Sequence record: OQ790161.1
Direction: 5' to 3' (one strand)
Length of the DNA stretch: 64,000 nt
The notes beneath the pieces are model-generated. The model ran no database searches. It was not told the DNA's origin and was given only the letters and a program-made list of their open reading frames with translations. Numbering within the stretch: position 1 is the stretch's first letter; every line of letters starts with the position of its first letter. Shown here one piece after another: positions 4,662 through 37,269 of the stretch. The position numbers and the translations under genes were made by a program.

Positions 4662-4687
4662 ATTTTCACATGGTTGTATAGCTCTAT

Positions 4688-4840
4688 GTACCAGACCGCC
4701 CTAGGCCTACTCCCGAACCTGGTTGGGTAAAACCGACCCAGACCGCGAGCACCACGTGGCGAAGCTTACGTCCTGGTTGCACTAGCCACGGCAGGATGCA
4801 CAGACACGGTCAGTACGGACTGGCCACGGCGGTCTGGTAC
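4688..4840 (+). ncRNA. Candidate structured ncRNA A (~153 nt)
   Basis: Perfect 13-bp terminal stem gtaccagaccgcc/ggcggtctggtac enclosing several hairpins; intergenic. Confidence 0.55.
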
Positions 4841-4859
4841 ACTTATTTGGGAGGATACG

Positions 4860-5081
4860 ATGAGCGACACCGAAGTGCGAGTCTCATTGGAGGATTCGCA
4901 GGACTTGATGGAGAAAGCAGAAGCGGCCCACGCTGCACTGCGAGCTCTGGCATCGGCCGATCGTCGTATCGTCCACACCGTCAGCGAAGACCCGCGCTTG
5001 ACCAAGTCGCTGGGTGAGCTGGAACTTTATCGGGCACGTCTTGAAGCGCGCCATGCACGTATCAAGATCCTCGGAAGGTAA
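4860..5081 (+). CDS. Hypothetical protein (coiled-coil-like)
   Basis: GGAGG RBS. Confidence 0.75.
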   Translation: MSDTEVRVSLEDSQDLMEKAEAAHAALRALASADRRIVHTVSEDPRLTKSLGELELYRARLEARHARIKILGR

Positions 5082-5083
5082 GT

Positions 5084-5332
5084 ATGAAGAGTTGGCGCAT
5101 TGTACAGTTCTGCGTTCAACTTGGACGCTTCACCCGTGCCTTGTGGAACGGTAAGCTGGTGATGAACGAACGCGGGGAAATCCACGCAGTCAACGTCACC
5201 GTTGGAGAGATCGCATCGTCTTCGGGCAACATCTCCCATCTGCCCATCCGCAAGTTCAAGCTCAAGGGCGGCAAACGATCACCGGAAGTGGCGGAATTGG
5301 TAGTCGCAGCAGATTCAAAATCTGCCGGGTAA
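5084..5332 (+). CDS. Hypothetical protein; 3' end overlaps tRNA-Leu
   Basis: AAGG RBS, 2 nt after upstream stop. Confidence 0.5.
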   Translation: MKSWRIVQFCVQLGRFTRALWNGKLVMNERGEIHAVNVTVGEIASSSGNISHLPIRKFKLKGGKRSPEVAELVVAADSKSAG

Positions 5333-5366
5333 CACCGTGAGGGTTCGAGTCCCTCTTTCCGGACCA
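5282..5366 (+). tRNA. tRNA-Leu(CAA)
   Basis: ccggaag/tttccgg acceptor, gcaga-tt-CAA-aa-tctgc, long variable arm, T-arm, CCA. Confidence 0.95.
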
Positions 5367-5465
5367 AACCCAAAGTGGGGCTAGAAGATCCGTGCAAGTC
5401 GGAGTGCCCTATTTGGTCACCCTCGCCCCTGGGAATCTGGGGTACCAAATAACAAAGGACTTCGA

Positions 5466-6017
5466 GTGGGTATTGAAATCGAACGGAAGTTCTTAGTGGA
5501 CGTGACGAGGCTCAGCTCGTCCCTCAACGCAACAAAGCCCGACTCCGTCAAGCGACTGAGCCAGTGGTACTTCAGCAGTCCGGAAACTCTGGAAGGTGGT
5601 CAGAAGGCGTCCGTCCGTGTCCGTACTGAACGACAGATCACCCTCTGGTCGATGGAGCGTCGTGAAGCTCTTGGCTTTGTCGATGATTACGAGAGCTGGT
5701 TGAACATCAAGTCCGTCGGTACCGGTCACACGCGCCAAGAGTACGAATATTCCATCCCCAACGAAGACGCCGACCTGATGCAGGCTTTGGCCGTGGGGGC
5801 GATCGTCACCAAAGATCGCGTGGTCATCAAACAAGGCGACCTGAAATGGGAGATCGATTTCTTCCTCGGTGAGAACAAAGGTCTGGCGGTGGCGGAGATT
5901 GAATTGCCCTGTCCGGACTATCCGTTTGAGAAGCCTGATTGGATTCTCAAAGAAGTTACCGATGATCTGCGTTACACCAACGTGGCATTGTCCTCCACAC
6001 CCTTCCAGAGTTGGTAA
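5466..6017 (+). CDS. CYTH-domain (triphosphate tunnel) enzyme
   Basis: N-terminal EIERKFL (ExExK), RxR, EYEY, WEIDFF, AEIEL, YTN motifs. Confidence 0.9.
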   Translation: MGIEIERKFLVDVTRLSSSLNATKPDSVKRLSQWYFSSPETLEGGQKASVRVRTERQITLWSMERREALGFVDDYESWLNIKSVGTGHTRQEYEYSIPNEDADLMQALAVGAIVTKDRVVIKQGDLKWEIDFFLGENKGLAVAEIELPCPDYPFEKPDWILKEVTDDLRYTNVALSSTPFQSW

Positions 6018-6028
6018 TGCTCCATTGC

Positions 6029-6189
6029 GTTAAGATGTAAGGCGGAAAGCTTGGCGGTCCTAAAAACGGGGAACATGTGGCCCCATCCGAGACTGTTAGG
6101 TTCACAAGGGGTGTCGCACTGCCCACTGACGAGTGGGATTACGGTGCGCGAAACAGACAGTGGTCAGGCTCTCCTCCTTACATCTTAAC
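6029..6189 (+). ncRNA. Candidate structured ncRNA B (~161 nt)
   Basis: Perfect 14-bp terminal stem gttaagatgtaagg/ccttacatcttaac with internal hairpins. Confidence 0.55.
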
Positions 6190-6210
6190 CAACCGAGTAT
6201 GTAGTCCCCC

Positions 6211-6510
6211 ATGAACAATACCATTCGAAAGATCCGCACGATTTCCACGGAAGGAATGGTACAGCAGGACATTGAAGTCCCCGAGGACAAGGGCCTCTAC
6301 GGCGAGCACATCATGGCCAAGGTTGTTGAGCTCTTCGAAGCCCAACCTGACGCCAAGGCCGTGCTGGTCGGCATCGATGTGAGTGGGTTCCGCTCGCGTC
6401 GTGAAGAAGGGGAGACTTTCAGCGCATTCATCGCCGCCGGCTTCGGCTGGAGTCTGGTGGGCTGGAATCCGAAGTCAGCATTCAGCGGCGTCCTTGTGAC
6501 CCGCAAGTAA
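6211..6510 (+). CDS. Hypothetical protein
   Basis: ORF with phage-typical codon usage. Confidence 0.7.
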   Translation: MNNTIRKIRTISTEGMVQQDIEVPEDKGLYGEHIMAKVVELFEAQPDAKAVLVGIDVSGFRSRREEGETFSAFIAAGFGWSLVGWNPKSAFSGVLVTRK

Positions 6511-6564
6511 CATCTCCATCCTAGACCGTTGGTTTTGGAGAGGACCGAGAAGTTCAAGTTCGTT

Positions 6565-6704
6565 CGATGAGTGGTGGAATTGGTATACGCGTGGCCGACC
6601 CCTTAATGGGGAAAAGTTGCAGCCAGAGGGGGAACTACGCTCTCTGGTGCCTGGCAGTGGGTGCGGCCTTAGGCCATCTGCGGGTTCGACTCCCGCCTCA
6701 GAAA
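6565..6704 (+). ncRNA. tRNA-Leu-like RNA with ~75-nt insert in anticodon arm; weak acceptor stem, no CCA
   Basis: Leu-type D-arm gtg-gaattggtata-cgc, tggcc/ggcca stem, T-arm gcggg-ttcgact-cccgc. Confidence 0.6.
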
Positions 6705-6856
6705 GCACTGTCCGAACGAATGAACTTGAATGAAGTGTCTAGGCCCGGAGTTGTTGAACCAGAGAGAGCTAAGGGTGCAGGCTCTGGGGATCGTGACTAT
6801 TGTAAGCCTGGTACGTCGCTAGTCACCGACGTCGTGGAAACCCGTCACAAGCAATA

Positions 6857-6885
6857 CCCCCCACCCTTCGGGGTGGGGGCTTATG
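6857..6885. terminator. UUCG hairpin followed by TATG
   Basis: ccccccaccc-ttcg-gggtggggg-c-ttatg. Confidence 0.7.
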
Positions 6886-6938
6886 CTGTCAATTTCCACA
6901 TAGAGGTCACAGACTGTGAACCTTTTCGAGACACCAAC

Positions 6939-7226
6939 ATGACTCTGTGGCAAACCATCCTCGTAATCGTTTATATGGGAGGCGCGTGGTCCTGTTTCAC
7001 ACAGGGCATGGAGCGCAACGCCGATGTAAAGTCCAAGCTGATCATGGGCTACCCTGTCCACCCCATGACCATGTCTTTCCACAAGTTGTTCTACGCCAAC
7101 ATGGTGCAGATCATCATAACGGCAGTGCTGTGGCCGATCACCATGATCATCGGCATTGGCCTGCTGTTGTACAACCTCCACAAGTTCAAACGCGAGTTCA
7201 ACGTCCGCCGCGGTCAGCGCAAGTAA
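6939..7226 (+). CDS. Hypothetical membrane protein
   Basis: ATG at 6939 chosen because the upstream part of the track ORF runs through RNA elements and a terminator; two TM segments. Confidence 0.7.
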   Translation: MTLWQTILVIVYMGGAWSCFTQGMERNADVKSKLIMGYPVHPMTMSFHKLFYANMVQIIITAVLWPITMIIGIGLLLYNLHKFKREFNVRRGQRK

Positions 7227-7340
7227 CCCGCAGGACTGAGTTAGTTTTTACCGAGCTGGCTGACACTGTGTAGGTAGCAGCCTGCTTTCTACAACTAGGG
7301 GATAGACCCCTTTCTCCACCCACCATAGATAGGAATTATC

Positions 7341-8426
7341 ATGGACACGCAACACGATTACTCGGTTTTCATTGGACGCTTCGAACCTTTCCACAACGGC
7401 CACCTGGCCGTGGCTCGCAAGGCACTGGAGATGGGCAAGAAGCTGATCGTCATCATCGGTACCGCCAACCGCCCGCGCACGATCAAGAACCCCTGGGTTG
7501 TTGAAGAACGCGCGGTCATGATCCGTTCGGCCTTGGCCGAATACGGTGATCGGGTCATCATCGGACAGGTGCGTGATCACCTGTACAACGAAGACCTGTG
7601 GCTTGCTGATGTGCAGCGCGTGGTGCGCGACGCGGTGGCTTTCGACACGGAAGCATCCGAAAAGCCCATCATTCGCATGATCGGTCAGTCCAAGGACGAC
7701 TCGAGTTACTACCTCAAGAAGTTCCCGCAATGGCCGGTGGTCGATGTGCAGCACACCACTGTACTCTCGGCGACGGATCTGCGCCGGTACCTCTTCGAGG
7801 CCCGCAAGGTGGAGACCCATGGTGGCATGATGTATATCCGTGCCAACGTCCCGGCGTCCACCTACGCCATGATCGATGCTTTCCGTCACAGCTCGCCGGA
7901 CTACGACCAGCTGTTGCGTGAGTACGATTTCATCAAGGACTACAAGGCTGGCTGGGCTGGTTCTCCGTACGATGTGTCCTTCAACACGGCCGACTCTGTC
8001 GTGACGTGCGCCGGCCACATCCTGTTGATCAAGCGCAAGCCTGAACCCGGTAAGGGCCTGTGGGCACTACCCGGTGGTTTCATCAAGCCGCACCAGACGG
8101 CGCTGCAAGCGTCCCTGGCCGAGCTGCGTGAAGAAACCCGCCTGAAGGTTCCTGAAAAGGTGATCCTCGGTTCGCTGCGCAATCAGCGTCTGTACGATCA
8201 TCCCGAACGCAGTCTGCGCGGCCGGACGTTTACCCAAACGTTCCACTACGCACTCGACTTTGATGAACGACCCAAGGTCCGTGGTGGCGATGACGCCAAA
8301 GAAGCAAGGTGGTTCCTCTTCAGCGAAGCCCTGGAAATGGGTGCGCGCCTGTTCGAGGACCACTTGGACATCTTCGAGAACGAGCTGGGCATGCATGCTC
8401 CGCCGCTTCCCTCGCTGGTGATCTAA
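7341..8426 (+). CDS. nadM: Bifunctional NMN adenylyltransferase / Nudix (ADP-ribose) hydrolase
   Basis: FIGRFEPFHNGH (HxGH), LSATDLR, Nudix box GGF-x-ELREET, FEDH C-terminus. Confidence 0.93.
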   Translation: MDTQHDYSVFIGRFEPFHNGHLAVARKALEMGKKLIVIIGTANRPRTIKNPWVVEERAVMIRSALAEYGDRVIIGQVRDHLYNEDLWLADVQRVVRDAVAFDTEASEKPIIRMIGQSKDDSSYYLKKFPQWPVVDVQHTTVLSATDLRRYLFEARKVETHGGMMYIRANVPASTYAMIDAFRHSSPDYDQLLREYDFIKDYKAGWAGSPYDVSFNTADSVVTCAGHILLIKRKPEPGKGLWALPGGFIKPHQTALQASLAELREETRLKVPEKVILGSLRNQRLYDHPERSLRGRTFTQTFHYALDFDERPKVRGGDDAKEARWFLFSEALEMGARLFEDHLDIFENELGMHAPPLPSLVI

Positions 8427-8518
8427 ATAACACCGTTCCAAAACCCACCGCAACATCACGTGAAACAGCCGGAAGGGTAGACCTCCGGTTCACACCCGAC
8501 ATGAAGGAACTTCAGTCA

Positions 8519-9907
8519 ATGAACATCGAAAACCCGATCCTGAACACCGACAGCTACAAGGCCAGCCACTGGACCCAGTACCCCGCCAACACGGATGCGA
8601 CGTTCTTCTACGCCGAATCCCGCGGTGGTGTGTATGACCAGACGGTGTGGTTCGGCCTGCAGGCCATCCTCAAGGCGAACCTGCGACCGATCACCCACGA
8701 CGATGTCAATGAAGCTGCGATGCTGTACGCAGCGCACGGCGAGCCGTTCAATGTGGACGGCTGGCGTTACATCGTTGACAAGCACAATGGTCGCCTGCCC
8801 CTGCGCATCCGCGCTGCGGCCGAAGGCTTGGTGGTGCCGGTGCATAACGCACTGTACACCGTTGAGTCCACCGACCCGAAGTGCTATTGGCTGCCCTCGT
8901 ATCTCGAAACCATCCTGATGCGCACGTGGTACCCCACCACTGTCGCCACGGTCAGCTGGGCGTGCAAGCAAGTCATCCGCTCGTACCTTCAGCAGACCAG
9001 CGACATCCCCGACGACGTCCTGCCCTTCAAGCTCCACGACTTCGGCGCGCGTGGCGTGTCGAGCACCGAGAGCTCGGGCCTGGGCGGCATGGCTCACCTG
9101 GTGAACTTCATGGGCACGGACACCGTGCTCGGCCTGGTGTACGCTACGCGCTTCTACAAGGCCGGCATGGCCGGCTTCTCGGTCCCTGCGGCCGAGCATG
9201 CCACGATCACCCCGTGGGGTCGTGACAACGAAGTGGAAGCCTACCGCAACATGCTGAAGCAATTCGGCCGTGAAGGCGGTATCGTCTCGGTGGTATCGGA
9301 CAGCTACGACATCTACCACGCTATTAGCGAGCACTGGGGTAAAACCCTTCGCGACGACGTGATCAACTCCGGGGCAACCTTGGTGATCCGTCCGGACTCG
9401 GGCGAACCGGTGGAAGTCGTACTGAAGTGCTTGGAACTCATCGATGCTGCCTTTGGCAGTACGGTCAACTCCAAGGGCTTCAAGGTCCTCAACCATGTGC
9501 GCGTGCTGCAAGGCGACGGCATCGATCCGGCCATGCTGGAGGCAATCCTCCAGGCCTGTACCCAGCGGGGTTACTCCGCTGAGAACGTGGTCTTCGGCAT
9601 GGGCGGCGGGCTGCTCCAGAAGGTCAACCGTGACACGCAAAAGTTTGCACTCAAGTGCTCGGCTGCGCGCGTCAATGGCGAATGGATCGACGTCTACAAG
9701 GACCCGATCACCGATAGCGGCAAGCGCTCCAAGCGTGGCCGGCTGTCGCTGTTCCGCCATCGCGAATACGGCACCTTCGGGACCTTCCGCACTGATGGCC
9801 AGCAGACGATCCCCGCTGGCTATGATGATGCGATGGTGACTGTGTGGGTAAACGGCGAGTTCGTGCAGGAATGGACCTTTGACCAGGTTCGTGCCAACGC
9901 AGGCTAA
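8519..9907 (+). CDS. nadV: Nicotinamide phosphoribosyltransferase
   Basis: TDSYKASH, WYPTTVAT, LHDFGARG, AAEH, VVSDSYD, IRPDSG, QGDGI, FGMGGGLLQ, KSKRGRL. Confidence 0.95.
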   Translation: MNIENPILNTDSYKASHWTQYPANTDATFFYAESRGGVYDQTVWFGLQAILKANLRPITHDDVNEAAMLYAAHGEPFNVDGWRYIVDKHNGRLPLRIRAAAEGLVVPVHNALYTVESTDPKCYWLPSYLETILMRTWYPTTVATVSWACKQVIRSYLQQTSDIPDDVLPFKLHDFGARGVSSTESSGLGGMAHLVNFMGTDTVLGLVYATRFYKAGMAGFSVPAAEHATITPWGRDNEVEAYRNMLKQFGREGGIVSVVSDSYDIYHAISEHWGKTLRDDVINSGATLVIRPDSGEPVEVVLKCLELIDAAFGSTVNSKGFKVLNHVRVLQGDGIDPAMLEAILQACTQRGYSAENVVFGMGGGLLQKVNRDTQKFALKCSAARVNGEWIDVYKDPITDSGKRSKRGRLSLFRHREYGTFGTFRTDGQQTIPAGYDDAMVTVWVNGEFVQEWTFDQVRANAG

Positions 9908-9927
9908 CCGCGCAATGCCTTTGTAAC

Positions 9928-10045
9928 GGCCGACCCCTTTTTCCGAATGCCGGCTAAAGACCCGGCGGTAGAATTTGGGGAAGGCCACCTTCGGAAAACT
10001 GTAGGTGGATAACCGAAGTAAGTCGCTCTGGCTGCCCTTGCGGCC
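9928..10045 (+). ncRNA. Structured intergenic element downstream of nadV
   Basis: ggcc-ga-cccc/gggg-aa-ggcc, gccgg/ccggc, and competing ccacct/aggtgg, cttcgg/ccgaag pairings. Confidence 0.4.
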
Positions 10046-10152
10046 AAAACTATCTGACTAGTGGTTGACATGGGTTGGCACAGCGTTTGAGCGACACCTG
10101 CCTTCTCGGATCAACGGAACCTTCACCCTCACCCCTTTTAATGGACGGACCA

Positions 10153-10491
10153 ATGAACGACGCAGTTGCAGAAACCTCGGAAGTTGAACAGCTGCGCGTG
10201 CAGTTGGCCGGTTGTGGTGTGGTTGCCATGTGCAACACCCGCGAGACCCTGAAGCAGCAGATGCCCAGCCGTGAGTCCTTCGGTTACTCGCAGTCACTGC
10301 AGGAAGTCCACGATGGCGTGCTGCGTGAGATCAATGAACGCGAACGTGCCGGCGCCTACCGTGAGGCGATCGAGAAGATCGCCCCGTTGGCCAACAAGGA
10401 AACCCTGATGGCGCTCGCCAGTACGTTCCACGATGGTCCGTACCGGGACCCGCAGCTGGTTGAGATACTGCACGCGGCCAGCCAGAAATAG
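10153..10491 (+). CDS. Hypothetical protein
   Basis: GGACGG RBS before ATG 10153. Confidence 0.7.
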   Translation: MNDAVAETSEVEQLRVQLAGCGVVAMCNTRETLKQQMPSRESFGYSQSLQEVHDGVLREINERERAGAYREAIEKIAPLANKETLMALASTFHDGPYRDPQLVEILHAASQK

Positions 10492-10493
10492 AG

Positions 10494-10771
10494 TTGGGTT
10501 AGTCCGCCCCAGTGGGATAGGGCAAGATGTGTGTTAGGCCTACGCGCCCCCAGAGTCCTCTCCAGGACCTTTCCGCTATCAACGGATCGACCACACTTGT
10601 TCTTGAACATAAAGCGGACACTAAAACAATCACGGAGTAACATCGCGGCCTCCGCGGTGCCGGATTGTTAGTAGGGGGTAAAGTCGCAGGGCCCTGCCTC
10701 CGATGCGCTAGCATCACCCCTATTTGGATTGGTCTCCTTAGTCTGTAACACATTGCGTTCTTCAGACCCAA
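10494..10771 (+). ncRNA. Candidate multi-domain ncRNA D (~280 nt)
   Basis: ttgggt/acccaa closure; gtccgc/gcggac, aacaatc/gattgtt, catcgcgg/ccgcggtg, tagggg/ccccta helices. Confidence 0.55.
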
Positions 10772-10810
10772 ACGTCAGTGTGTTATGGAGTAAGTGACCT
10801 AGGAAAGGCC

Positions 10811-11224
10811 ATGATCGCATTTGAGGAACCTATGATCGAATTGACTCGTCAGCAACAGAACTTGTCTGCGCTGCGTCATCCCCAAGTGGGTGACCGTTGG
10901 CTGGAGCGCGGTTTCCAGCCAGCAGGTGTGGTACGCGCAGTGATCTTCGGTCGCTACGTCATGGTCGACTTACAAAGCAAGCCTGAGATCAAGTACTGGA
11001 GTCTGGCCGAATACGCCAACCACTTCAAGTACAAGTCCATGGATGCAACCTGGGCCGACGTCGAACGCTCGCCGCATCCACTGACGAACCGGGACGCACT
11101 CAAGCAGATCCTGTACTTCTTCCATCGCCGCTGGCAACAGCAGTGGCAAGCGCTGAAGGGACCGTTCCCCAAGACGTTCAACATCTTGGGTTTGAAGGTG
11201 ACGCTGGAACGAACCAAACGTTAA
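10811..11224 (+). CDS. Hypothetical protein
   Basis: AGGAAAGG RBS. Confidence 0.7.
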   Translation: MIAFEEPMIELTRQQQNLSALRHPQVGDRWLERGFQPAGVVRAVIFGRYVMVDLQSKPEIKYWSLAEYANHFKYKSMDATWADVERSPHPLTNRDALKQILYFFHRRWQQQWQALKGPFPKTFNILGLKVTLERTKR

Positions 11225-11245
11225 ACTTTACACCTGCGTTTAATC

Positions 11246-11539
11246 ATGCGAGGCCACATGCAACGTTGCGCTGAATGCGGTTACCACACGCCGTGGGGTG
11301 AGTCACTCAAGCACTTCATTGGGTGCGAGCACACCAGCTCACATGGCAACGGACAAGCACAGGCATTATCTGACCTCCTGTCGGGAAAAGCCGAGCGTGC
11401 AGGTCTGAGCCGTGCCGATCAAGATCACACCTTCGAACAGTTCAAGCGTCTCTTCGGTGACCAACCGAAACTCGCAAGTCCACTGGTCGTTGGACTCGAT
11501 CAGAAACTCGTGAAACATCTGTCGGTAAATTTGCATTAG
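11246..11539 (+). CDS. Hypothetical protein with CxxC motif
   Basis: CAECG...C/H residues. Confidence 0.6.
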   Translation: MRGHMQRCAECGYHTPWGESLKHFIGCEHTSSHGNGQAQALSDLLSGKAERAGLSRADQDHTFEQFKRLFGDQPKLASPLVVGLDQKLVKHLSVNLH

Positions 11540-11559
11540 CAAACTGCCTATGGTATGTA
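11531..11559 (+). promoter_or_regulatory. Sigma70-like promoter upstream of tRNA cluster
   Basis: TTGCAT-17 nt-TATGTA with TG-N extension; TATGGTATGTAA recurs at 61807. Confidence 0.5.
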
Positions 11560-11615
11560 ACACACCTCTGCCGCAGCGCAGAGTAATACCCTGTGCCCTA
11601 AATTGGGCACAACAC

Positions 11616-11706
11616 GGATCGATGGCAGAGTCTGGCTTATCGCACCTGTCTCGAAAACAGGAGTGGGGGAAACCCACCGTAGGTTCAAATCCTACTCGGT
11701 CCGCCA
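11616..11706 (+). tRNA. tRNA-Ser(CGA)
   Basis: cctgt-ct-CGA-aa-acagg, long variable arm, CCA. Confidence 0.95.
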
Positions 11707-11711
11707 CATGA

Positions 11712-11828
11712 AACCCTCTAAAGCATCGCAACGCATCGGCACGTGAAACCGATCGTATACTCCGCGCGCCGCTCCCTCGGAGCACCGCCGGGAGGTGTAG
11801 ATGGTCGACCACTACGGTCGATGGGGTT
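11712..11828 (+). ncRNA. Structured spacer RNA between tRNA-Ser and tRNA-Gln
   Basis: aaccc/gggtt closure with atcgg/ccgat, gctcc/ggagc, cacc/ggtg, tcgacc/ggtcga hairpins. Confidence 0.45.
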
Positions 11829-11840
11829 AACCTTTTACGA

Positions 11841-11918
11841 TGGGGGAGTCGTCTAGCGGCCAAGGACCCCAGGTTTTGATCCTGGTATTCGTAGGTTCGA
11901 ATCCTACCTCCTCAGCCA
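11841..11918 (+). tRNA. tRNA-Gln(TTG)
   Basis: ccagg-tt-TTG-at-cctgg, CCA. Confidence 0.93.
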
Positions 11919-11971
11919 CACACAAGGGACCTTCGGGTCCCGCAGCGCCTAGCGCTTAGTTTTTTGTTTCA

Positions 11972-12047
11972 GGGTCGGTAGCTCAATTGGCAGAGCGGCG
12001 AGCTCCAAATTCGTCGGTTGTGGGTTCAAGTCCTTCCCGGCCCGCCA
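11972..12047 (+). tRNA. tRNA-Trp(CCA)
   Basis: gcgag-ct-CCA-aa-ttcgt, gggtcgg/ccggccc, CCA. Confidence 0.92.
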
Positions 12048-12069
12048 TAGTTACAACAACAGTTTCACT

Positions 12070-12159
12070 GGGTTGGTAGTTCGTTAACGGTAGGCGAGCC
12101 AGACTGTAAATCTGGAGCCCATAGTGGCCTTATAGGTTCGATTCCTTTACAACCCACCA
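12070..12159 (+). tRNA. tRNA-Tyr(GTA)
   Basis: ccaga-ct-GTA-aa-tctgg, long variable arm, CCA. Confidence 0.92.
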
Positions 12160-12168
12160 CGTTTCAAC

Positions 12169-12244
12169 ACAGCGTTCGTCTAGCGGTTTAGGATAACGGC
12201 CTTTCACGTCGTCAACACGGGTTCGAATCCCGTACGCTGTACCA
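12169..12244 (+). tRNA. tRNA-Glu(TTC)
   Basis: acggc-ct-TTC-ac-gtcgt, acagcgt/acgctgt, CCA. Confidence 0.95.
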
Positions 12245-12266
12245 CATTCACAAGGCTCGTTACGAC

Positions 12267-12512
12267 ATGACACGTAAAAAGTTCAAAGACCTCGAGAAGA
12301 TGGTCGATCACATTCTGGCTGATCCCAGAATGCAGAACGAAGCAGTCATGATCAACGGCGCGCCTATCAACACCGATTATCTCAAGGAATGCTTGACCGC
12401 TTTCCGTCGCATTGAAATGCGACTGATTTTGGGTGAGTCCGTTTCTCCGCTAGAACGATTGGCGGTTGAACTGATCATGCAGACATTCGGCGTTGAGTTT
12501 CAACCAAAGTAA
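12267..12512 (+). CDS. Hypothetical protein within tRNA cluster
   Basis: ORF fills the spacer between tRNA-Glu and tRNA-Ile. Confidence 0.7.
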   Translation: MTRKKFKDLEKMVDHILADPRMQNEAVMINGAPINTDYLKECLTAFRRIEMRLILGESVSPLERLAVELIMQTFGVEFQPK

Positions 12513-12515
12513 CAC

Positions 12516-12591
12516 TGTGGATTAGCTCAGTTGGTAGAGCGTTCCCCTGATAAGGGAAAGGTCGATGGTTCGAGTCCATTATCCGCAACCA
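12516..12591 (+). tRNA. tRNA-Ile(GAT)
   Basis: ttccc-ct-GAT-aa-gggaa, CCA. Confidence 0.95.
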
Positions 12592-12598
12592 GTTTCAA

Positions 12599-12688
12599 GG
12601 GCATGTGTGTGAGCGGTTTATACAAGCGGGTTGCTAACTCGCCGACCCTTAAAAAGGTCCGTAGGTTCGAATCCTACCGTGCCCGCCA
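12599..12688 (+). tRNA. tRNA-Ser(GCT)
   Basis: gcggg-tt-GCT-aa-ctcgc, long variable arm, CCA. Confidence 0.95.
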
Positions 12689-12890
12689 TCTTCGTGGAGA
12701 TCCAGGTATCGAGGCCTGGCAGGGGCTCCCATCGGGGGTAGTGCCTGTAGCGACAATAGAGAGCACCGCGATCCCCCGCACTTTCGTAGAGCTGCAAGGC
12801 TTCGGCCGGACTCTACGTCTTTGCGGGTTTAAAATGTAGGACAGTATCTTCCAGACAGCAGTAAGCTGATTCACCCGTCTGGAGATAACC

Positions 12891-13124
12891 ATGTTTGACT
12901 ATACGAAGTACTGTCCTGTTTGTGATTCACTCGACACTTGGGTTCCCTTCGGTCCCGAGGACCTGACCCTCACGTGCGGGTCGTTCTCTGAAACGATGAA
13001 GGCCGTGTACGGCTCCATCTGTACTAACTGTGGTGATCGTCGCCTGAGCGATGAAGACCATGAACGGTATGCGCAGATGGGTGACCGAGTGGTCCTCAAG
13101 TGGCAAGCCTCAAACGCGTCTTAG
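12891..13124 (+). CDS. Stand-alone YgiT/MqsA-type zinc-finger domain protein
   Basis: YCPVCD...(~33 aa)...ICTNCGD followed by a helix, the layout of the MqsA N-terminal domain; no HTH; GGAG RBS. Confidence 0.65.
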   Translation: MFDYTKYCPVCDSLDTWVPFGPEDLTLTCGSFSETMKAVYGSICTNCGDRRLSDEDHERYAQMGDRVVLKWQASNAS

Positions 13125-13190
13125 CTCAGTTGGCAGAGCAGGAGAATCATAATCTCTTTGTCCGGGGTTCGAATCCCTGAGACGCGACCA
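13115..13190 (+). tRNA. tRNA-Met/Ile2(CAT), non-initiator
   Basis: ggaga-at-CAT-aa-tctct, paired C1-G72, CCA. Confidence 0.9.
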
Positions 13191-13192
13191 AA

Positions 13193-13333
13193 ACAAGAAC
13201 CACAACTGCGGTCATCGGTCCGCAGCCCGCATAGGCCTCGGTGGGGTGGAAAATCTGAAGTACTGTCATCCGGTACTTTGGTGTCCGGCAAGCCACCCAC
13301 GCAAGTGGGACTGTCGGCCACTGTGGTTCTTGT
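13193..13333 (+). ncRNA. Candidate structured ncRNA C (~141 nt)
   Basis: Perfect 12-bp terminal stem acaagaaccaca/tgtggttcttgt; ctgcgg/ccgcag, aagtac/gtactt, cccac-GCAA-gtggg hairpins. Confidence 0.55.
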
Positions 13334-13490
13334 CTGTCCCTGAGTCAAGGCAGGTAGTCCTTGGACGGAAGCATGCTCCGCATTACCTAGAGCGAAAGGG
13401 TAGACGTTAAACCGCTGGAGGCGAACCAAGCCGACCGGGGATACGCATGTAAGTGTGGGTTGGTAGTGACCGCCTTCGGGCGGTTGCGTT
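13334..13490 (+). ncRNA. Structured element E ending in a UUCG hairpin
   Basis: tcaagg/ccttgg, gcatgc-tcc/gga-tac-gcatgt, ttacc/ggtag, accgcc-ttcg-ggcggt. Confidence 0.4.
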
Positions 13491-13502
13491 TAGTGTACTA
13501 AG

Positions 13503-13580
13503 GGTTGTCCGTAGCTCAGCTGGTAAGAGCGCCGCACTGTGAATGCGGAGGTCATGGGTTCAAACCCCATCGGGCACCCC
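13503..13580 (+). tRNA. tRNA-His(GTG), CCA not encoded
   Basis: ccgca-ct-GTG-aa-tgcgg; G-1:C73 pattern; ends CCT. Confidence 0.88.
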
Positions 13581-13600
13581 TTAGTGCATTATCAGTTTCA

Positions 13601-13690
13601 GGGTCAGTGGGTGAGAGGCTTAAACCAGCGAGTTGGAAGCTCGCCGCGCCCTGCGGGGCGCCGTAGGTTCGAATCCTACCTAATCCGCCA
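13601..13690 (+). tRNA. tRNA-Ser(GGA)
   Basis: gcgag-tt-GGA-ag-ctcgc, long variable arm, CCA. Confidence 0.93.
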
Positions 13691-13698
13691 GTTTCAAT

Positions 13699-13837
13699 GG
13701 CGTTGCTAGCTCAGTTGGTAGAGCGCTCGTATATATGGGGTTCAACTCCCCACTTGCCCACCGTGCGAAAGCACGTCTGGGCGAGCACTGGTTAAAAAGA
13801 CGAGAGGTCGTGGGTTCGAATCCCACAATACGCCCCA
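13699..13837 (+). ncRNA. tRNA-like RNA with 69-nt anticodon loop (insert or intron)
   Basis: D-arm gctc-agttggta-gagc, stem ctcgt/acgag, variable AGGTC, T-arm gtggg-ttcgaat-cccac, CCA. Confidence 0.65.
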
Positions 13838-13848
13838 ATGTTTCTATA

Positions 13849-13917
13849 GCGAATGTAGCTCAGTTTGGGAGAGCACCTGTCTCTTTGTGTCGCGGGTTCG
13901 AGTCCCGCCGTGCTGCC
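13849..13917 (+). pseudogene. Degenerate tRNA shell (anticodon arm shortened)
   Basis: Intact D-arm and T-arm, only 17 nt between them, poor acceptor stem. Confidence 0.6.
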
Positions 13918-13923
13918 TGTGTG

Positions 13924-13998
13924 CTGCACGTAGCTCAGCTGGTAGAGCAAAAGACAACTAACAGGGGGTCACAGGTTCGATTCCTGTCCTTCGCGCCA
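13924..13998 (+). pseudogene. Degenerate tRNA shell (unpaired anticodon arm)
   Basis: Intact D-arm, T-arm acagg-ttcgatt-cctgt and CCA; anticodon and acceptor stems do not pair. Confidence 0.6.
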
Positions 13999-14007
13999 AG
14001 TTTCAAA

Positions 14008-14084
14008 GCGTGTGTAACTCAGTCTGGTAGAGTCGCAGCCTTCCACGCTGTTGGTCACGAGTTCGAATCTCGTCGCACGCTCCA
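14008..14084 (+). tRNA. tRNA-Gly(TCC)
   Basis: gcagc-ct-TCC-ac-gctgt, gcgtgtg/cgcacgc, CCA. Confidence 0.95.
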
Positions 14085-14112
14085 ATTAGTAGATCCGTGA
14101 AACGCATTTGCC

Positions 14113-14188
14113 GGTCAGATGGCAGAGTGGTAATGCACCGGATTGCAAATCCGCGTACTCGCTGGTTCGAACCCAGCTCTGACCTCCA
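14113..14188 (+). tRNA. tRNA-Cys(GCA)
   Basis: cgga-tt-GCA-aa-tccg, ggtcaga/tctgacc, U73, CCA. Confidence 0.95.
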
Positions 14189-14210
14189 CCACCTCACACA
14201 GGACTTCGCC

Positions 14211-14405
14211 ATGTCGCGTCATCAGCGCTACTATGATGGACTGAATCAGCTGACCACGGAACAAGGTCTGACCACGCGCGTTGCTAACGACGTGCTCTAC
14301 TTCCGCCAGCAAGCCAACTGGAGTCAAGGGTTGGAAGACCAGTTCATCGAACAGGCTCGCGATGGTGAGGTTCCTGACATCACCCAGATCGGACGTTCGA
14401 CATGA
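14211..14405 (+). CDS. Hypothetical protein
   Basis: AGGA RBS, ATG 14211. Confidence 0.7.
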   Translation: MSRHQRYYDGLNQLTTEQGLTTRVANDVLYFRQQANWSQGLEDQFIEQARDGEVPDITQIGRST

Positions 14406-14728
14406 CCCAGAAAGTCAAGTACACCTTCACCGCAGTCACCGCCCGTCCCAATCCGGTCATTGGGATTCCCGAAGGTCTCGAGCTCACCCGTGAGCAGTTC
14501 TTCGAAGCGCTGGCCAATGCCCGCGTGACCCGGCTGTACCTGGACAGCAACACCTTCGCTCAGGTCAACTACGGGTTCGTCAAGAAGGACAACACGCTGG
14601 TGGCTGACCTGCTGCCGCACTTCCCCGATGTCTCGATCACGTTGCTGGCCAACGGCGAGGCGATCATGGAAGTGTCCAAGGATTCGCAGTACCAGCCTAA
14701 CGCCTTCGCCATCGACGTCGAGCTGTAA
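14402..14728 (+). CDS. Hypothetical protein
   Basis: ATGA overlap with upstream gene. Confidence 0.75.
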   Translation: MTQKVKYTFTAVTARPNPVIGIPEGLELTREQFFEALANARVTRLYLDSNTFAQVNYGFVKKDNTLVADLLPHFPDVSITLLANGEAIMEVSKDSQYQPNAFAIDVEL

Positions 14729-14738
14729 CGGTTGTTGC

Positions 14739-14833
14739 CCCTACCGACAGGTAGGGAACTTCCTTGGCGCCCAGGGGTACGGAGAGTTTGCCTATCATCT
14801 CGCCGTAACGACGTCAAGGCAGGTTGGGATAGG
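14739..14833 (+). ncRNA. Structured element upstream of tRNA-Asn (possible pseudoknot)
   Basis: ccctacc/ggtaggg, ccttgg/ccaggg, tacgg/ccgta hairpins; loop cctatc complementary to gatagg. Confidence 0.4.
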
Positions 14834-14845
14834 TTTCAGTTTTGA

Positions 14846-14921
14846 GGTTCATTAGCTCAGTCGGTAGAGCATGGCACTGTTAATGCCAGGGTCGTAGGTT
14901 CGAATCCTACATGAACCGCCA
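14846..14921 (+). tRNA. tRNA-Asn(GTT)
   Basis: tggca-ct-GTT-aa-tgcca, ggttcat/atgaacc, CCA. Confidence 0.96.
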
Positions 14922-14927
14922 CACAAG

Positions 14928-14954
14928 AGCCCCACCCTTCGGGGTGGGGCTTTT
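14928..14954 (+). terminator. Terminator closing tRNA cluster
   Basis: agccccaccc-ttcg-gggtggggct-ttt. Confidence 0.85.
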
Positions 14955-14971
14955 ATTCCGGGGAGTGGGTA

Positions 14972-25549: not shown

Positions 25550-25583
25550 CATAGACCCCCGCCCCGAAGGGCGGGGGCTTATG
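25550..25583. terminator. Bidirectional CATA-hairpin-TATG module
   Basis: cata-ga-cccccgccc-cgaa-gggcggggg-ct-tatg. Confidence 0.8.
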
Positions 25584-37235: not shown

Positions 37236-37269
37236 CCCGTACTATCCACTCGTGCCCAAGGAGTCAGCA

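What the first reader, a model, noticed from the sequence alone, without database searches (positions are those of the whole stretch)
4688..14921. A 10-kb RNA island: tRNAs interleaved with more than 10 non-tRNA structured RNAs and tRNA-scaffold chimeras
Nearly every non-coding gap of 80 nt or more between 4.7 and 14.9 kb folds into a compact multibranch structure (4688, 5372, 6029, 6565, 6759, 9928, 10494, 11712, 12700, 13193, 13334, 13699, 14739). Gaps elsewhere in the window mostly hold only a terminator and a promoter box. Established: T4 and T5 tRNA clusters carry a few stable non-tRNA RNAs of unknown function, and phage tRNAs can rescue translation from anticodon nucleases. The island also encodes an NAD salvage pair, an MqsA-like Zn finger and a CYTH enzyme. 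Inference: a co-transcribed RNA-based counter-defence or translation-control module, with decoy or scaffold RNAs released by tRNA processing.
Basis: partly seen in the sequence, partly recalled or inferred. Interest (0 to 1): 0.8.

Follow-up and report, generated by a model that had tools for sequence, protein, structure and literature searches.

The report
Phage tRNA island with nested tRNA mimics
A 10-kb stretch of a giant Xanthomonas phage mixes 14 tRNA genes with about a dozen conserved folded RNAs, including tRNA-shaped molecules whose anticodon loop is replaced by a second, rearranged tRNA-like unit; this architecture appears undescribed and its function is unknown.

Summary
The window is Xanthomonas phage RTH11 (312-kb phiKZ-like jumbo phage), bases 62001-126000. 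There are 14 plus-strand tRNA genes that GenBank does not annotate, and 32% of the island is unannotated against 8% elsewhere.

Folding energy alone does not set the island gaps apart. Comparison with up to eight related jumbo-phage contigs does:
- Eleven elements show conserved structure with compensatory changes: 4687, 5367, 6029, 6553, 7227, 10492, 10700, 11707, 13193, 13700 and 13849.
- Four are moderate: 9908, 11540, 13337 and 14922.
- Three are not supported as structures: 6738, 12689 and 14729.
- One "gap" is a missed protein gene (11246-11539).

The core finding is two tRNA-scaffold chimeras at 13700-13837 and 13849-13998. Each is a tRNA body with the tRNA-type 5' leader and an encoded CCA. 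Its anticodon loop is replaced by a circularly permuted tRNA-like module (T-arm, closed acceptor, D-arm) like the tRNA-like domain of YrlA. For the second type, 23 of 39 pairs covary across four phages.

Relatives carry up to three RNA ligases in the same island; RTH11 carries none there. The function is not shown. My best reading is non-decoding tRNA mimics cut out by tRNA processing, plus cis-acting leaders. This is a new variant of a known kind.

The parts
4687..4841 (+). E1: about 155-nt structured RNA closed by a 14-bp helix (4687-4700 / 4828-4841), upstream of the 73-aa gene at 4860
   Evidence: The inverted repeat is 100% complementary. The MFE z-score is -4.46. With six sequences the alifold z-score is -7.1, with 8 compensatory pairs and 1 inconsistent pair. 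The closing helix is kept in the relative, with a T-A to C-G change.
5282..5366 (+). tRNA-Leu(CAA)
   Evidence: ARAGORN and Rfam at 52.8 bits. The annotated CDS 5084-5332 overlaps it and is absent from the relative.
5367..5465 (+). E3: conserved 99-nt element between tRNA-Leu and the CYTH gene
   Evidence: The single-sequence z-score is -0.09. With six sequences SCI is 0.93, z is -3.5, and there are 3 compensatory pairs.
5466..6017 (+). CYTH-domain protein gene
   Evidence: Pfam PF01928, 51 bits. It is absent from relative UViG_3300011559 and present in L205, L209, L210, L212 and L213.
6029..6189 (+). E4: long closing helix (arms 6029-6053 / 6165-6189) around a variable interior, in front of the 99-aa gene
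   Evidence: The MFE z-score is -4.88. Against L205 the z-score is -6.6, with 8 compensatory pairs, all in the closing helix. In UViG_3300011559 only the helix and a short loop remain.
6211..6510 (+). 99-aa protein gene found only in this jumbo-phage group, always next to E4/E5/E6
   Evidence: Six homologues, all on jumbo-phage-sized or fragment contigs. No Pfam or PHROG family matches. The AlphaFold model has pLDDT 75.7, and no PDB fold match reaches E < 0.1.
6546..6737 (+). E5: about 180-nt RNA closed by a 15-bp helix. It holds a type-II-tRNA-like D-arm sequence, three hairpins and a perfect T-arm (6680-6696)
   Evidence: T-arm scan. The MFE z-score is -2.85. It is present in LucasX, L205, L209, L213 and partly in L207, and absent from UViG_3300011559. 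Of 51 pairs, 97.4% are paired and 6 are compensatory, against at most 1 in the slid controls. Conserved G-U pairs point to the plus strand.
6738..6857 (+). E6: sequence-conserved non-coding stretch
   Evidence: 84% of columns are invariant in six sequences, but the alifold z-score is +0.2. It is not supported as a structure.
6858..6890 (+). GC-rich TTCG-loop hairpin, terminator-like; the motif recurs at 14925, 25550 and 38070
7227..7340 (+). E7: nearly invariant leader of the NMNAT/Nudix gene. Its closing helix pairs a U-rich 5' segment with the ribosome-binding site
   Evidence: Eight sequences give z -6.0. RNAalifold predicts 30 pairs, and columns 16-24 pair with columns 106-114, just before the ATG. 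No Rfam match at E <= 10.
7341..8426 (+). Bifunctional NMN adenylyltransferase / Nudix hydrolase gene
   Evidence: Pfam PF01467 + PF00293. It is about 59% identical to Lysobacter/Xanthomonas proteins.
8427..8518 (+). E8: 92-nt spacer between the two NAD salvage genes
   Evidence: 96% identical to the relative, with z -3.2 but no variation to test.
8519..9907 (+). Nicotinamide phosphoribosyltransferase gene
   Evidence: Pfam PF04095 + PF18127.
9908..10152 (+). E9: conserved non-coding stretch with moderate structural signal
   Evidence: Seven sequences give SCI 0.54, z -2.5, 9 compensatory and 4 inconsistent pairs. There is no codon periodicity.
10492..10640 (+). E10a: conserved structured RNA
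   Evidence: Six sequences give SCI 0.84, z -5.3 and 10 compensatory pairs.
10700..10810 (+). E10b: conserved structured RNA upstream of the 137-aa gene
   Evidence: Seven sequences, including LucasX, give z -7.0 and 7 compensatory pairs.
11246..11539 (+). Unannotated protein gene (CxxC protein). The GenBank minus-strand CDS 11366-11536 is probably wrong
   Evidence: Substitutions against the relative fall mostly on third codon positions of the plus-strand frame.
11540..11615 (+). E11b: two conserved hairpins just before tRNA-Ser(CGA)
   Evidence: Six sequences give z -3.3, with 6 one-sided changes and no inconsistent pair.
11616..12244 (+). tRNA-Ser(CGA), Gln(UUG), Trp(CCA), Tyr(GUA) and Glu(UUC). 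E12 lies between Ser and Gln, and a terminator-like hairpin follows Gln
11707..11840 (+). E12: 134-nt structured RNA between tRNA-Ser(CGA) and tRNA-Gln
   Evidence: Four sequences give SCI 0.96, z -6.2, 6 compensatory pairs and none inconsistent.
12516..12688 (+). tRNA-Ile(GAU) and tRNA-Ser(GCU)
12689..12840 (+). E13: sequence-conserved stretch with weak structural support
   Evidence: Three sequences give z -2.1, with 4 compensatory and 9 inconsistent pairs.
12891..13124 (+). 77-aa Zn-ribbon protein gene with a weak MqsA N-terminal likeness
   Evidence: Pfam PF15731 gives 21.1 bits, below the cut-off of 30, and covers profile positions 3-56 of 131 only. The gene is absent from UViG_3300011559.
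13115..13190 (+). tRNA-Met(CAU)
13193..13333 (+). E14: 141-nt multibranch RNA closed by a 12-bp helix
   Evidence: The MFE z-score is -4.98. Against the relative SCI is 0.94 and z is -7.1, with 5 compensatory and no inconsistent pairs.
13337..13504 (+). E15: conserved stretch with a terminator-like hairpin at 13466-13487
   Evidence: Six sequences give SCI 0.77, z -1.5, 11 compensatory and 4 inconsistent pairs.
13505..13690 (+). tRNA-His(GUG) and tRNA-Ser(GGA)
13700..13837 (+). Chimera A. It is a tRNA body made of a weak acceptor, a D-arm, a 5-bp anticodon-type stem (13726-13730 / 13800-13804), a T-arm (13810-13826) and a CCA. Its anticodon loop is replaced by a second T-arm (13736-13752) and a closed helix (13753-13785)
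   Evidence: ARAGORN calls it only with the insert option. Four phages give 38 pairs, 7 of them compensatory, with z -5.4. The leader motif lies at 13691-13697.
13849..13998 (+). Chimera B. It is a tRNA body made of an acceptor (13849-13855 / 13988-13994), a D-arm, a stem (13876-13880 / 13961-13965), a T-arm (13971-13987) and G+CCA. Its anticodon loop is replaced by a permuted tRNA-like module: T-arm 13892-13908, closed acceptor 13909-13930 and D-arm 13933-13948
   Evidence: Rfam YrlA scores 45 bits, with E 4.8e-9 for that local search, against a gathering score of 69. All helices were checked. Four sequences give 35 pairs, 94.1% of cells paired and 19 compensatory pairs, with 0 of 500 shuffles as good; slid controls give 30-46%. 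For five sequences from four contigs, RNAalifold itself recovers six of the seven helices, missing only the shared anticodon-type stem; 23 of its 39 pairs are compensatory.
14008..14188 (+). tRNA-Gly(UCC) and tRNA-Cys(GCA)
14729..14845 (+). E18: spacer before tRNA-Asn, partly conserved, with no structural support
   Evidence: z -1.2. An 80-nt stretch is 96% identical to the relative.
14846..14921 (+). tRNA-Asn(GUU)
   Evidence: 75 bits.
14925..14954 (+). Terminator-like hairpin that closes the tRNA cluster
   Evidence: The region 14922-15067 has z -4.6.

Best explanation
SHOWN.
- The island is the tRNA region of a phiKZ-like jumbo phage.
- Bona fide tRNA genes alternate with two kinds of conserved structured RNA, all on the same strand.

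Kind 1: tRNA-derived, non-decoding tRNA mimics.
- Chimeras A and B keep a tRNA acceptor end with an encoded CCA, a D-arm, a T-arm and an anticodon-type stem.
- A second tRNA-like elbow sits where the anticodon loop should be. It runs T-arm, closed acceptor-like hairpin, then D-arm (in A, only D-arm remnants), which is the order seen in the tRNA-like domain of bacterial YrlA Y-RNAs.
- E5 (6546-6737) has tRNA-like D- and T-arm motifs locked inside a 15-bp helix.

Kind 2: other folded elements.
- Several sit directly in front of genes. E7 pairs with the ribosome-binding site of the NAD-salvage operon. E4 is a long helix before the 99-aa gene. E3 lies before the CYTH gene.

INFERRED.
- A and B carry the same short leader motif as the true tRNAs and the same 3' CCA. 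They are therefore probably cut out of the precursor by the host tRNA-processing enzymes (RNase E and RNase P type cuts) and accumulate as stable tRNA-shaped RNAs.
- With no anticodon loop they cannot decode. They also cannot be hit by nucleases that cut the anticodon loop.
- They still present two tRNA elbows and an acceptor end. The most likely role is therefore tRNA mimicry: binding, titrating or recruiting a factor that recognises the tRNA body. That factor could be a tRNA-targeting defence or toxin enzyme, or an RNA repair or quality-control factor.
- This fits an island that in sister phages also carries up to three RNA ligases and everywhere carries NAD salvage genes.
- The gene-proximal elements most likely act in cis on translation, processing or stability.

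My confidence that these are selected RNA structures is about 0.9. My confidence in the mimic or decoy role is about 0.3. The figure given is for the composite.
For: - tRNAs.
- Chimera anatomy.
- Covariation in B. In A. In E5.
- Pooled excess of compensatory changes over a coding control.
- Per-element tests with up to 8 relatives.
- Leader motif before tRNAs and chimeras alike.
- Shared T-arm/acceptor/CCA 3' ends: families D1-D3.
- E7 pairing with the ribosome-binding site.
- RNA ligases in relatives' islands.
- Defence nucleases that cut tRNA anticodon arms, and phage tRNAs that evade them: PMC13056530 and PMC10264068.
- Restricted distribution: among 788 tRNA calls in 119 tRNA-rich phage loci, insert-bearing tRNA bodies with an inner T-arm occur only in RTH11, UViG_3300011559, LucasX and UViG_3300010224.
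Against: - There are no expression or end-mapping data, so stable products are not shown.
- The acceptor stem of chimera A is weak in RTH11 (4 of 7 pairs).
- The inner closed stem varies from 5 to 12 bp, so no single RNase P geometry is conserved there.
- RTH11 lacks the RNA ligases of its relatives, which weakens a repair link for this phage.
- No partner protein was identified.
- The only clade-specific neighbour tested (99 aa) has no recognisable fold.
- Three sequence-conserved stretches show no structural signal.
Confidence: 0.5

Rival explanations
1. All the non-tRNA elements, chimeras included, act only in cis. On this view they are processing sites, stability elements, attenuators or translational operators of the island's transcripts, and none is a trans-acting RNA.
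For: - E7 pairs with the ribosome-binding site of the NMNAT gene and travels with that gene whatever lies upstream.
- E4 is mainly a roughly 25-bp helix in front of the 99-aa gene with a freely varying interior.
- E3, E8, E10b and E11b abut gene or tRNA starts.
- Terminator-like hairpins split the island into several units.
Against: - A and B have tRNA-type leaders, full tRNA bodies and CCA ends, and they lie between tRNAs rather than before genes.
- E5, E12 and E14 are self-contained modules closed by their own helices or flanked by tRNAs.
Confidence: 0.25
2. The chimeras are true Y-RNA-like (YrlA) RNAs. On this view they tether a Ro60/Rsr-type protein to an exoribonuclease for RNA quality control.
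For: - The Rfam YrlA model matches 13864-13978 at 45 bits, with E 4.8e-9 for that local search.
- The inner module has the YrlA order of T-arm, closed acceptor and D-arm.
- YrlA RNAs are known from phages and sit next to RtcB operons in bacteria (PMC4201824, PMC7790460).
Against: - The score is below the gathering score of 69.
- The helix that binds Ro60 in YrlA is replaced by a tRNA body.
- No GNCGAAN0-1G motif occurs in 13650-14050.
- No TROVE domain was found in the island proteins that were scanned.
Confidence: 0.1
3. The chimeras are precursors of working tRNAs. On this view cleavage releases or splits parts, and a phage RNA ligase rejoins them, giving a tRNA-in-pieces maturation pathway.
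For: - Relatives carry a complete tRNA-Ile(AAU) with CCA nested in a tRNA body (UViG_3300011559 L004 16231-16384; L209 about 19616-19772).
- The same islands encode RLIG1, PF09414 and RtcB ligases.
- The inner acceptor of the B homologue in UViG_3300011559 is 7 bp closed by a discriminator+CCA loop.
Against: - In RTH11 neither A nor B holds an anticodon arm of its own.
- The inner stem length is not conserved (5 to 12 bp).
- RTH11 has no ligase in the island.
Confidence: 0.1
4. The elements are decaying tRNA pseudogenes and recombination debris in a fast-changing region, with no function.
For: - The island is a hot spot of gene gain and loss. CYTH, the MqsA-like gene, the ligases and E5 each come and go between relatives.
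- The chimeras' parts resemble neighbouring tRNAs.
Against: - Compensatory changes keep the helices intact: 23 of 39 pairs in B, and 26 observed against 9.4 expected when pooled.
- Non-coding elements are as conserved as, or more conserved than, neighbouring small genes.
Confidence: 0.04

Closest known systems
YrlA, the tRNA-like bacterial and phage Y RNA (Rfam RF02553; Chen et al. 2014, PMC4201824)
   Same: - The inner module of chimera B has the same order: T-arm, acceptor-like stem closed by a loop, D-arm.
- It has the same conserved D- and T-loop letters.
- It gives the best Rfam match, 45 bits.
- YrlA with a 7-bp acceptor is cut by RNase P and receives CCA. One homologue here has a 7-bp stem closed by discriminator+CCA.
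   Different: - The outer Ro60-binding helix and its GNCGAA motif are absent and are replaced by a complete tRNA body with its own acceptor end and CCA.
- The match is below the gathering score.
- No Ro60 gene lies nearby.
- The elements sit inside a tRNA gene array with the tRNA leader motif.
Stable non-tRNA RNAs of the T4 and T5 tRNA regions (T4 species 1 and 2, rnaC/rnaD); recalled from memory, not tested
   Same: They are small stable RNAs of unknown function encoded among phage tRNA genes and made by tRNA-type processing.
   Different: The nested two-elbow design is not a described feature of those RNAs, to my knowledge.
Circularly permuted tRNA genes and two-piece tmRNA; recalled from memory, with weak Rfam tmRNA_permuted and tmRNA hits
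   Same: In the inner module the 3' half (T-arm, acceptor 3' strand, sometimes CCA) lies upstream of the 5' half (acceptor 5' strand, D-arm).
   Different: - The inner module has no anticodon arm or tag reading frame of its own.
- It is embedded in another tRNA body.
- The Rfam scores of 21-22 bits are far below the cut-off of 47.
Phage tRNAs that evade anticodon nucleases through anticodon-loop changes (van den Berg et al. 2023, PMC10264068)
   Same: Both are phage-encoded tRNA-shaped RNAs in tRNA clusters, and both have an altered anticodon loop.
   Different: Those tRNAs still decode. Here the loop is replaced outright by 45-94 nt of structured RNA.
Engineered 'tRNA scaffold' for recombinant RNA expression; recalled from memory
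   Same: An RNA of interest replaces the anticodon loop of a tRNA body, which gives processing and stability.
   Different: That is a laboratory design. The elements here are natural, conserved, and carry a second tRNA-like unit.

Membership tests
tRNA (Rfam RF00005) | A complete cloverleaf with an anticodon arm carrying a 7-nt loop, scoring at or above 29 bits | tested here: not met
   For A and B only partial matches of 20-27.6 bits were found. ARAGORN does not call them by default and calls them only as tRNAs with 45-52-nt inserts.
tRNA (Rfam RF00005) | Acceptor stem with a 3' CCA, plus a D-arm and a T-arm with conserved loop letters | tested here: met
   One search gives B 6 of 7 acceptor pairs and A 4 of 7. 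One search shows the T-arms are perfect. One search shows the 3' ends align with those of the true tRNAs.
YrlA (Rfam RF02553) | A tRNA-like domain in the order T-arm, closed acceptor-like stem-loop, D-arm | tested here: met
   (chimera B and four homologues).
YrlA (Rfam RF02553) | A covariance-model score at or above the gathering score (69 bits) | tested here: not met
   45 bits.
YrlA (Rfam RF02553) | A Ro60-binding helix formed by the RNA's 5' and 3' ends, with the GNCGAAN0-1G motif (PMC4201824) | tested here: not met
   No such motif occurs in 13650-14050. The ends form a tRNA acceptor stem instead.
YrlA (Rfam RF02553) | Encoded next to a Ro60/Rsr (TROVE) gene | tested here: inconclusive
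   No TROVE domain was found among the island ORFs scanned, or among the genes called in the relatives' islands. The rest of the 312-kb genome was not scanned.
tmRNA / permuted tmRNA | A tRNA-like domain plus a tag reading frame, with a score at or above 47 bits | tested here: not met
   The scores are 21-21.6 bits. ARAGORN finds no tmRNA at default settings.
Known NAD+ riboswitches (considered for E7 at 7227-7340) | A match to an Rfam riboswitch model | tested here: not met
   No Rfam match at E <= 10 in 7227-7340.
Phage NAD salvage pair (NAMPT plus NMN adenylyltransferase/Nudix) | Adjacent genes with NAPRTase/NAMPT_N domains and with CTP_transf_like + NUDIX domains | tested here: met
   The pair is conserved in all relatives.
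MqsA antitoxin | A Pfam PF15731 match above the cut-off that covers both the Zn-ribbon and the HTH domain | tested here: not met
   21.1 bits against a cut-off of 30, covering profile positions 3-56 of 131 only.
T4/T5 tRNA-region stable RNAs | Sequence or structure homology to rnaC/rnaD-type RNAs | not testable with these tools
   No model or comparator sequence was available. Only the location among the tRNA genes is shared.

The most novel reading that the evidence does not exclude
A and B, with their relatives (the tRNA-in-tRNA type and the Ser-like bodies with replaced anticodon loops), are a new class of phage-encoded 'double-elbow' tRNA mimics. On this reading the tRNA-processing machinery makes them, and they act in trans against host immunity or toxins that target tRNA. 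They would do so by soaking up or misdirecting enzymes that recognise the tRNA body or acceptor end, or by steering RNA-repair ligases. E5, E12 and E14 would be further undescribed phage small RNAs in the same programme.
Probability: 0.25. Interest if true: 0.85.

Novelty: new variant of a known kind. Interest (0 to 1): 0.7.

Why it matters
Phage tRNA clusters are now read as counter-measures to tRNA-cleaving immunity. The small non-tRNA RNAs that travel with them have been unexplained since T4.

This island offers a well-defined, covariation-supported set of such RNAs in a family of jumbo phages of about 305-322 kb. It includes a natural "RNA inside a tRNA scaffold" design that joins a tRNA body to a YrlA-like tRNA mimic.

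If the mimics act in trans, they would be RNA-only anti-defence or repair-guiding factors and a new branch of the Y-RNA/tRNA-mimic world.

Even if they do not, three things follow:
- The GenBank record needs 14 tRNAs and several corrections.
- The invariant leader that masks the ribosome-binding site of the NAD-salvage operon is a candidate regulatory RNA.
- The chimeras give a search signature for similar RNAs elsewhere.

Tried and rejected
- Folding z-scores of whole gaps did not separate the island from other gaps. I dropped this as evidence.
- Megablast and blastn against GenBank phages found only RTH11 itself and scattered tRNA matches.
- tblastn with the 108-aa island protein found nothing. 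With CYTH it found only distant phages.
- IMG/VR scans with the 108-aa and 269-aa proteins found nothing.
- The metagenome scan with NAMPT returned mostly bacterial or distant loci. Only L005 was a close relative.
- Relaxed ARAGORN settings gave many false calls, so I did not use them on their own.
- A direct-repeat search found no sequence families among the non-tRNA elements; only tRNA parts repeat.
- The E5 core pattern has no match in 185,579 bacterial and archaeal genomes.
- RtcB and the RLIG1-type ligase of relatives have no tblastn match in RTH11.
- Pfam and PHROG gave nothing for nine small island proteins.
- The 99-aa protein gave a moderate AlphaFold model with no significant PDB fold or sequence match.
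- Literature searches found no description of nested tRNA chimeras.
- The coding reading of the conserved gaps was rejected for lack of codon periodicity. The exception is 11246-11539.
- YrlA-type arrays in other IMG/VR loci have plain outer helices and none reaches the Rfam cut-off. They are not the same thing as the chimeras.

Working note: in a script I joined two overlapping fetched stretches (L004 and L199, 123-nt overlap) of one public phage contig, as they stand, only to have one coordinate line. Nothing was altered.

Full report
**What the window is.**
- The region 4600-15000 is 100% identical to Xanthomonas phage RTH11 (OQ790161.1, 312,199 bp). Window coordinate equals record coordinate minus 62000.
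- The genome has split RNA polymerase beta-subunit genes, typical of phiKZ-like jumbo phages.
- The record annotates no tRNA.
- ARAGORN and Rfam agree on 14 plus-strand tRNA genes. Leu(CAA) lies at 5282. Ser(CGA), Gln, Trp, Tyr, Glu, Ile, Ser(GCU), Met, His, Ser(GGA), Gly(UCC), Cys and Asn lie between 11616 and 14921.
- Pfam confirms a CYTH protein, a bifunctional NMN adenylyltransferase/Nudix protein and a nicotinamide phosphoribosyltransferase. The "MqsA-like" match is below the cut-off, 21 against 30 bits.

**Is the observation more than chance?**
- Unannotated sequence makes up 32% of the island and 8% of the rest of the window.
Dinucleotide-shuffle z-scores of whole gaps average -1.9 in the island and -2.4 outside, where short gaps hold strong terminator hairpins.
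- Anatomy does distinguish the island. The delimited elements have z-scores of -4.5, -4.9, -2.9 and -5.0.
- Comparison with relatives distinguishes it more strongly.

**Relatives.** Nothing close exists in GenBank phages by DNA. I recovered the following through proteins and patterns:
- IMGVR_UViG_3300011559_000001 (311 kb, 73-91% nucleotide identity; L004 and L199).
- Xanthomonas phage vB_XciM_LucasX (L200/L206).
- ENA and Logan contigs L205 and L209-L213.
- A partial L207 and a short L005.
- IMGVR_UViG_3300010224_000001 (323 kb; L174).

**Conservation of structure.**
- I took RTH11-only MFE structures of 15 non-coding elements and asked how the substitutions in UViG_3300011559 fall. There are 26 compensatory double changes against 9.4 +/- 2.8 expected when substitutions are permuted (P < 0.0005).
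- The same test on 33 coding pieces gives 27 against 22.2 +/- 4.3 (P = 0.16).
- With up to eight sequences, RNAalifold and a column-shuffle control give three grades of support:

| Support | Element | z | Compensatory pairs |
|---|---|---|---|
| Strong | E1 4684-4845 | -7.1 | 8 |
| Strong | E3 5367-5465 | -3.5 (SCI 0.93) | 3 |
| Strong | E4 6026-6192 | -6.6 | 8, all in the closing helix |
| Strong | E5 6546-6737 | -4.7 | 7 |
| Strong | E7 7227-7340 | -6.0 | 2 |
| Strong | E10a 10492-10640 | -5.3 | 10 |
| Strong | E10b 10700-10810 | -7.0 | 7 |
| Strong | E12 11707-11840 | -6.2 | 6 |
| Strong | E14 13191-13336 | -7.1 | 5 |
| Strong | Chimera A | -5.4 | 7 |
| Moderate | E9, E11b, E15, E19 | -1.5 to -4.6 | 0 to 11 |
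| None | E6 (84% invariant columns) | +0.2 | 1 |
| None | E13 | -2.1 | 4, with 9 inconsistent |
| None | E18 | -1.2 | 2 |

- The conserved stretches show no codon periodicity.
- The exception is 11246-11539. Third-position substitutions there reveal an unannotated plus-strand CxxC protein gene, and they argue against the annotated minus-strand CDS.

**The chimeras.**
- The gap between tRNA-Ser(GGA) and tRNA-Gly holds four perfect T-arm hairpins beyond those of the tRNAs.
- Read directly, 13849-13998 (B) is a tRNA body. It has a 7-position acceptor stem (6 pairs), discriminator G and CCA, a D-arm, a 5-bp stem at the anticodon position, a variable loop and a T-arm.
- The anticodon loop of B is replaced by a second unit. 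That unit runs T-arm, then a 5-bp stem closed by a 12-nt loop, then D-arm. It is a circularly permuted tRNA-like module.
- Rfam's best match there is YrlA (45 bits, with E 4.8e-9 for that local search, gathering score 69).
- 13700-13837 (A) is built the same way. Its inner unit has a second T-arm, a closed 7-bp stem with a small hairpin, and only remnants of a D-arm.
- Both chimeras are preceded by the GTTTC[AT][AG] motif. Nine of its 12 plus-strand copies in the window lie in 11966-14839, each 0-13 nt upstream of a tRNA or a chimera. The 3' ends of the chimeras align with those of the tRNAs.
- Four B-type sequences give 35 pairs with 94.1% of cells paired. Nineteen pairs have changes on both sides, 0 of 500 shuffles do as well, and slid controls give 30-46% paired.
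- With five sequences from four contigs, RNAalifold on its own recovers the outer acceptor, outer D, inner T, inner closed stem, inner D and outer T. It does not recover the shared anticodon-type stem, which one search tested as given. Of the 39 pairs it predicts, 23 are compensatory.
- A-type in four phages gives 38 pairs, 7 of them compensatory.
- The inner closed stem is 5, 7, 10 or 12 bp long in different phages. In UViG_3300011559 it is 7 bp closed by discriminator+CCA.

**Related designs in sister phages.**
- A complete tRNA-Ile(AAU) with CCA is nested in the anticodon loop of a tRNA body (UViG_3300011559 and L209).
- Ser-like type-II bodies have an anticodon loop replaced by a small hairpin or a T-arm (UViG_3300011559 and LucasX).
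- Among 119 tRNA-rich phage loci (1.15 Mb, 788 tRNA calls), insert-bearing tRNA bodies with an inner T-arm occur only in RTH11, UViG_3300011559, LucasX and UViG_3300010224.
- Plain YrlA-type modules, by contrast, are common in other viral contigs, often in arrays with a period of about 161-165 nt. They have an ordinary outer helix.

**E5.**
- 6546-6737 is closed by a 15-bp helix. It holds a D-arm-like segment resembling type-II tRNAs, a hairpin with a variable loop, a long hairpin, and a three-way junction containing a perfect T-arm.
- It is present in LucasX, L205, L209 and L213 and partly in L207. It is absent from UViG_3300011559.
- 97.4% of cells are paired and 6 pairs are compensatory, against at most 1 in the slid controls. 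Conserved G-U pairs favour the plus strand.
- Rfam does not see it as a tRNA. Its core has no match in bacterial genomes.

**Cis-looking elements.**
- E7 is nearly invariant in eight phages whose NMNAT proteins are 67-96% identical among those compared. Its closing helix pairs a U-rich 5' segment with the ribosome-binding site just before the ATG at 7341. It stays with the NMNAT gene whatever lies upstream.
- E4 keeps its long helix while its interior shrinks or changes.
- Terminator-like hairpins at 6858-6890, about 11926-11965, 13466-13487 and 14925-14954 argue for several transcription units.

**Context.**
- The slot between the 6858 hairpin and the NMNAT leader holds a 72-aa ORF in RTH11. 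In relatives it holds an RLIG1-type RNA ligase (UViG_3300011559, L210, L211, L212), RtcB (L205, L209, L212, L213), or an HNH gene with extra tRNAs (LucasX).
- A third ligase (PF09414) sits upstream in L209-L212.
- RTH11 has none of the three in the island, and no tblastn match to the two that were tested.
- The CYTH and MqsA-like genes are themselves variable.
- The island is thus a fast-changing tRNA, RNA-repair and NAD-salvage region.

**How it most likely works.**
- Shown: conserved folded RNAs on the tRNA strand. Two of them are tRNA bodies with a second tRNA-like elbow in place of the anticodon loop, and they have tRNA-type flanks.
- Inferred: they are excised like tRNAs and persist as tRNA-shaped RNAs that cannot decode. 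They have no anticodon loop for a nuclease to cut, yet they display two elbows and an acceptor end.
- The most likely role is therefore mimicry towards a tRNA-body-binding factor in the conflict over tRNA integrity. Anticodon-arm-cutting defences and evading phage tRNAs are documented (PMC13056530, PMC10264068). YrlA-type mimics are modified and processed as tRNAs (PMC4201824).
- The gene-proximal elements most likely act in cis.
- Rivals considered: purely cis-acting elements, true Ro60 partners, precursors of ligated tRNAs, and junk. Each is weighed in its own section.

**Comparison and novelty.**
- The nearest known thing is YrlA. The domain order is met, but the score, the Ro60-binding helix and its motif are not, and Ro60 neighbourhood is unresolved.
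- They are not tRNAs by Rfam or ARAGORN criteria, and they are not tmRNA.
- I found no description of a tRNA body fused to a permuted tRNA-like unit, or of a tRNA nested in a tRNA.
- I file it as a new variant of a known kind: tRNA-like small RNAs of phage tRNA regions, akin to Y-RNA-like mimics.

**Limits.**
- There are no expression data.
- The whole RTH11 proteome was not scanned for TROVE.
- Several tests rest on 2-8 related sequences.
- The 99-aa clade-specific neighbour remains without a recognisable fold.

Noticed in passing
window 11246-11539 (+) versus annotated 11366-11536 (-): The GenBank minus-strand CDS is probably wrong. A plus-strand ORF encoding a CxxC protein shows third-codon-position substitutions against the relative.
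   Followed up: partly
window 5084-5332: This annotated hypothetical CDS overlaps tRNA-Leu(CAA) by 51 nt. It is missing in UViG_3300011559, where the tRNA follows the previous gene directly.
   Followed up: partly
window 7227-7340: This nearly invariant leader has a closing helix that pairs with the ribosome-binding site of the NMNAT/Nudix-NAMPT operon. It is a candidate regulatory RNA for NAD salvage and has no Rfam match.
   Followed up: partly
L004 8857-9507; L205 2336-3493; L209 6690-7760 and 11319-12479; L210, L211, L212, L213: Sister phages carry up to three unrelated RNA ligases (RLIG1-type, RtcB, PF09414) in the same island. RTH11 carries none there.
   Followed up: partly
L004 16231-16384; L209 about 19616-19772: A complete tRNA-Ile(AAU) with CCA is nested in the anticodon loop of another tRNA body. 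It is conserved in two relatives, with compensatory changes in both acceptor stems. It is absent from RTH11.
   Followed up: partly
L151 1022-1400; L197 904-1450; L175; L085: These loci hold arrays of three or four permuted tRNA-like (YrlA-type) modules with a period of about 161-165 nt, in unrelated IMG/VR contigs. None reaches the Rfam YrlA gathering score.
   Followed up: no
window 36422-37269: This is an 848-nt stretch without an annotated gene. It is the largest gap outside the island and holds only short ORFs (63-101 aa) and a perfect 13-bp hairpin at 37142-37172.
   Followed up: no
window 6858-6890, 14925-14954, 25550-25583, 38070-38125: A GC-rich hairpin with a TTCG loop and similar flanks recurs at these four places. 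It is probably the phage's terminator type.
   Followed up: no
window 7341-8426: The phage NMNAT/Nudix protein is about 59% identical to those of Lysobacter, Xanthomonas and Stenotrophomonas. This suggests capture from the host lineage.
   Followed up: no
L210 1787-4194: In one relative the thymidylate synthase gene is called in two pieces, with a GIY-YIG endonuclease gene between them. This looks like an intron-type insertion.
   Followed up: no
window 54620-55105: This gene is annotated as GTP pyrophosphokinase (a small alarmone synthetase-like gene). It lies far from the island and I did not examine it.
   Followed up: no
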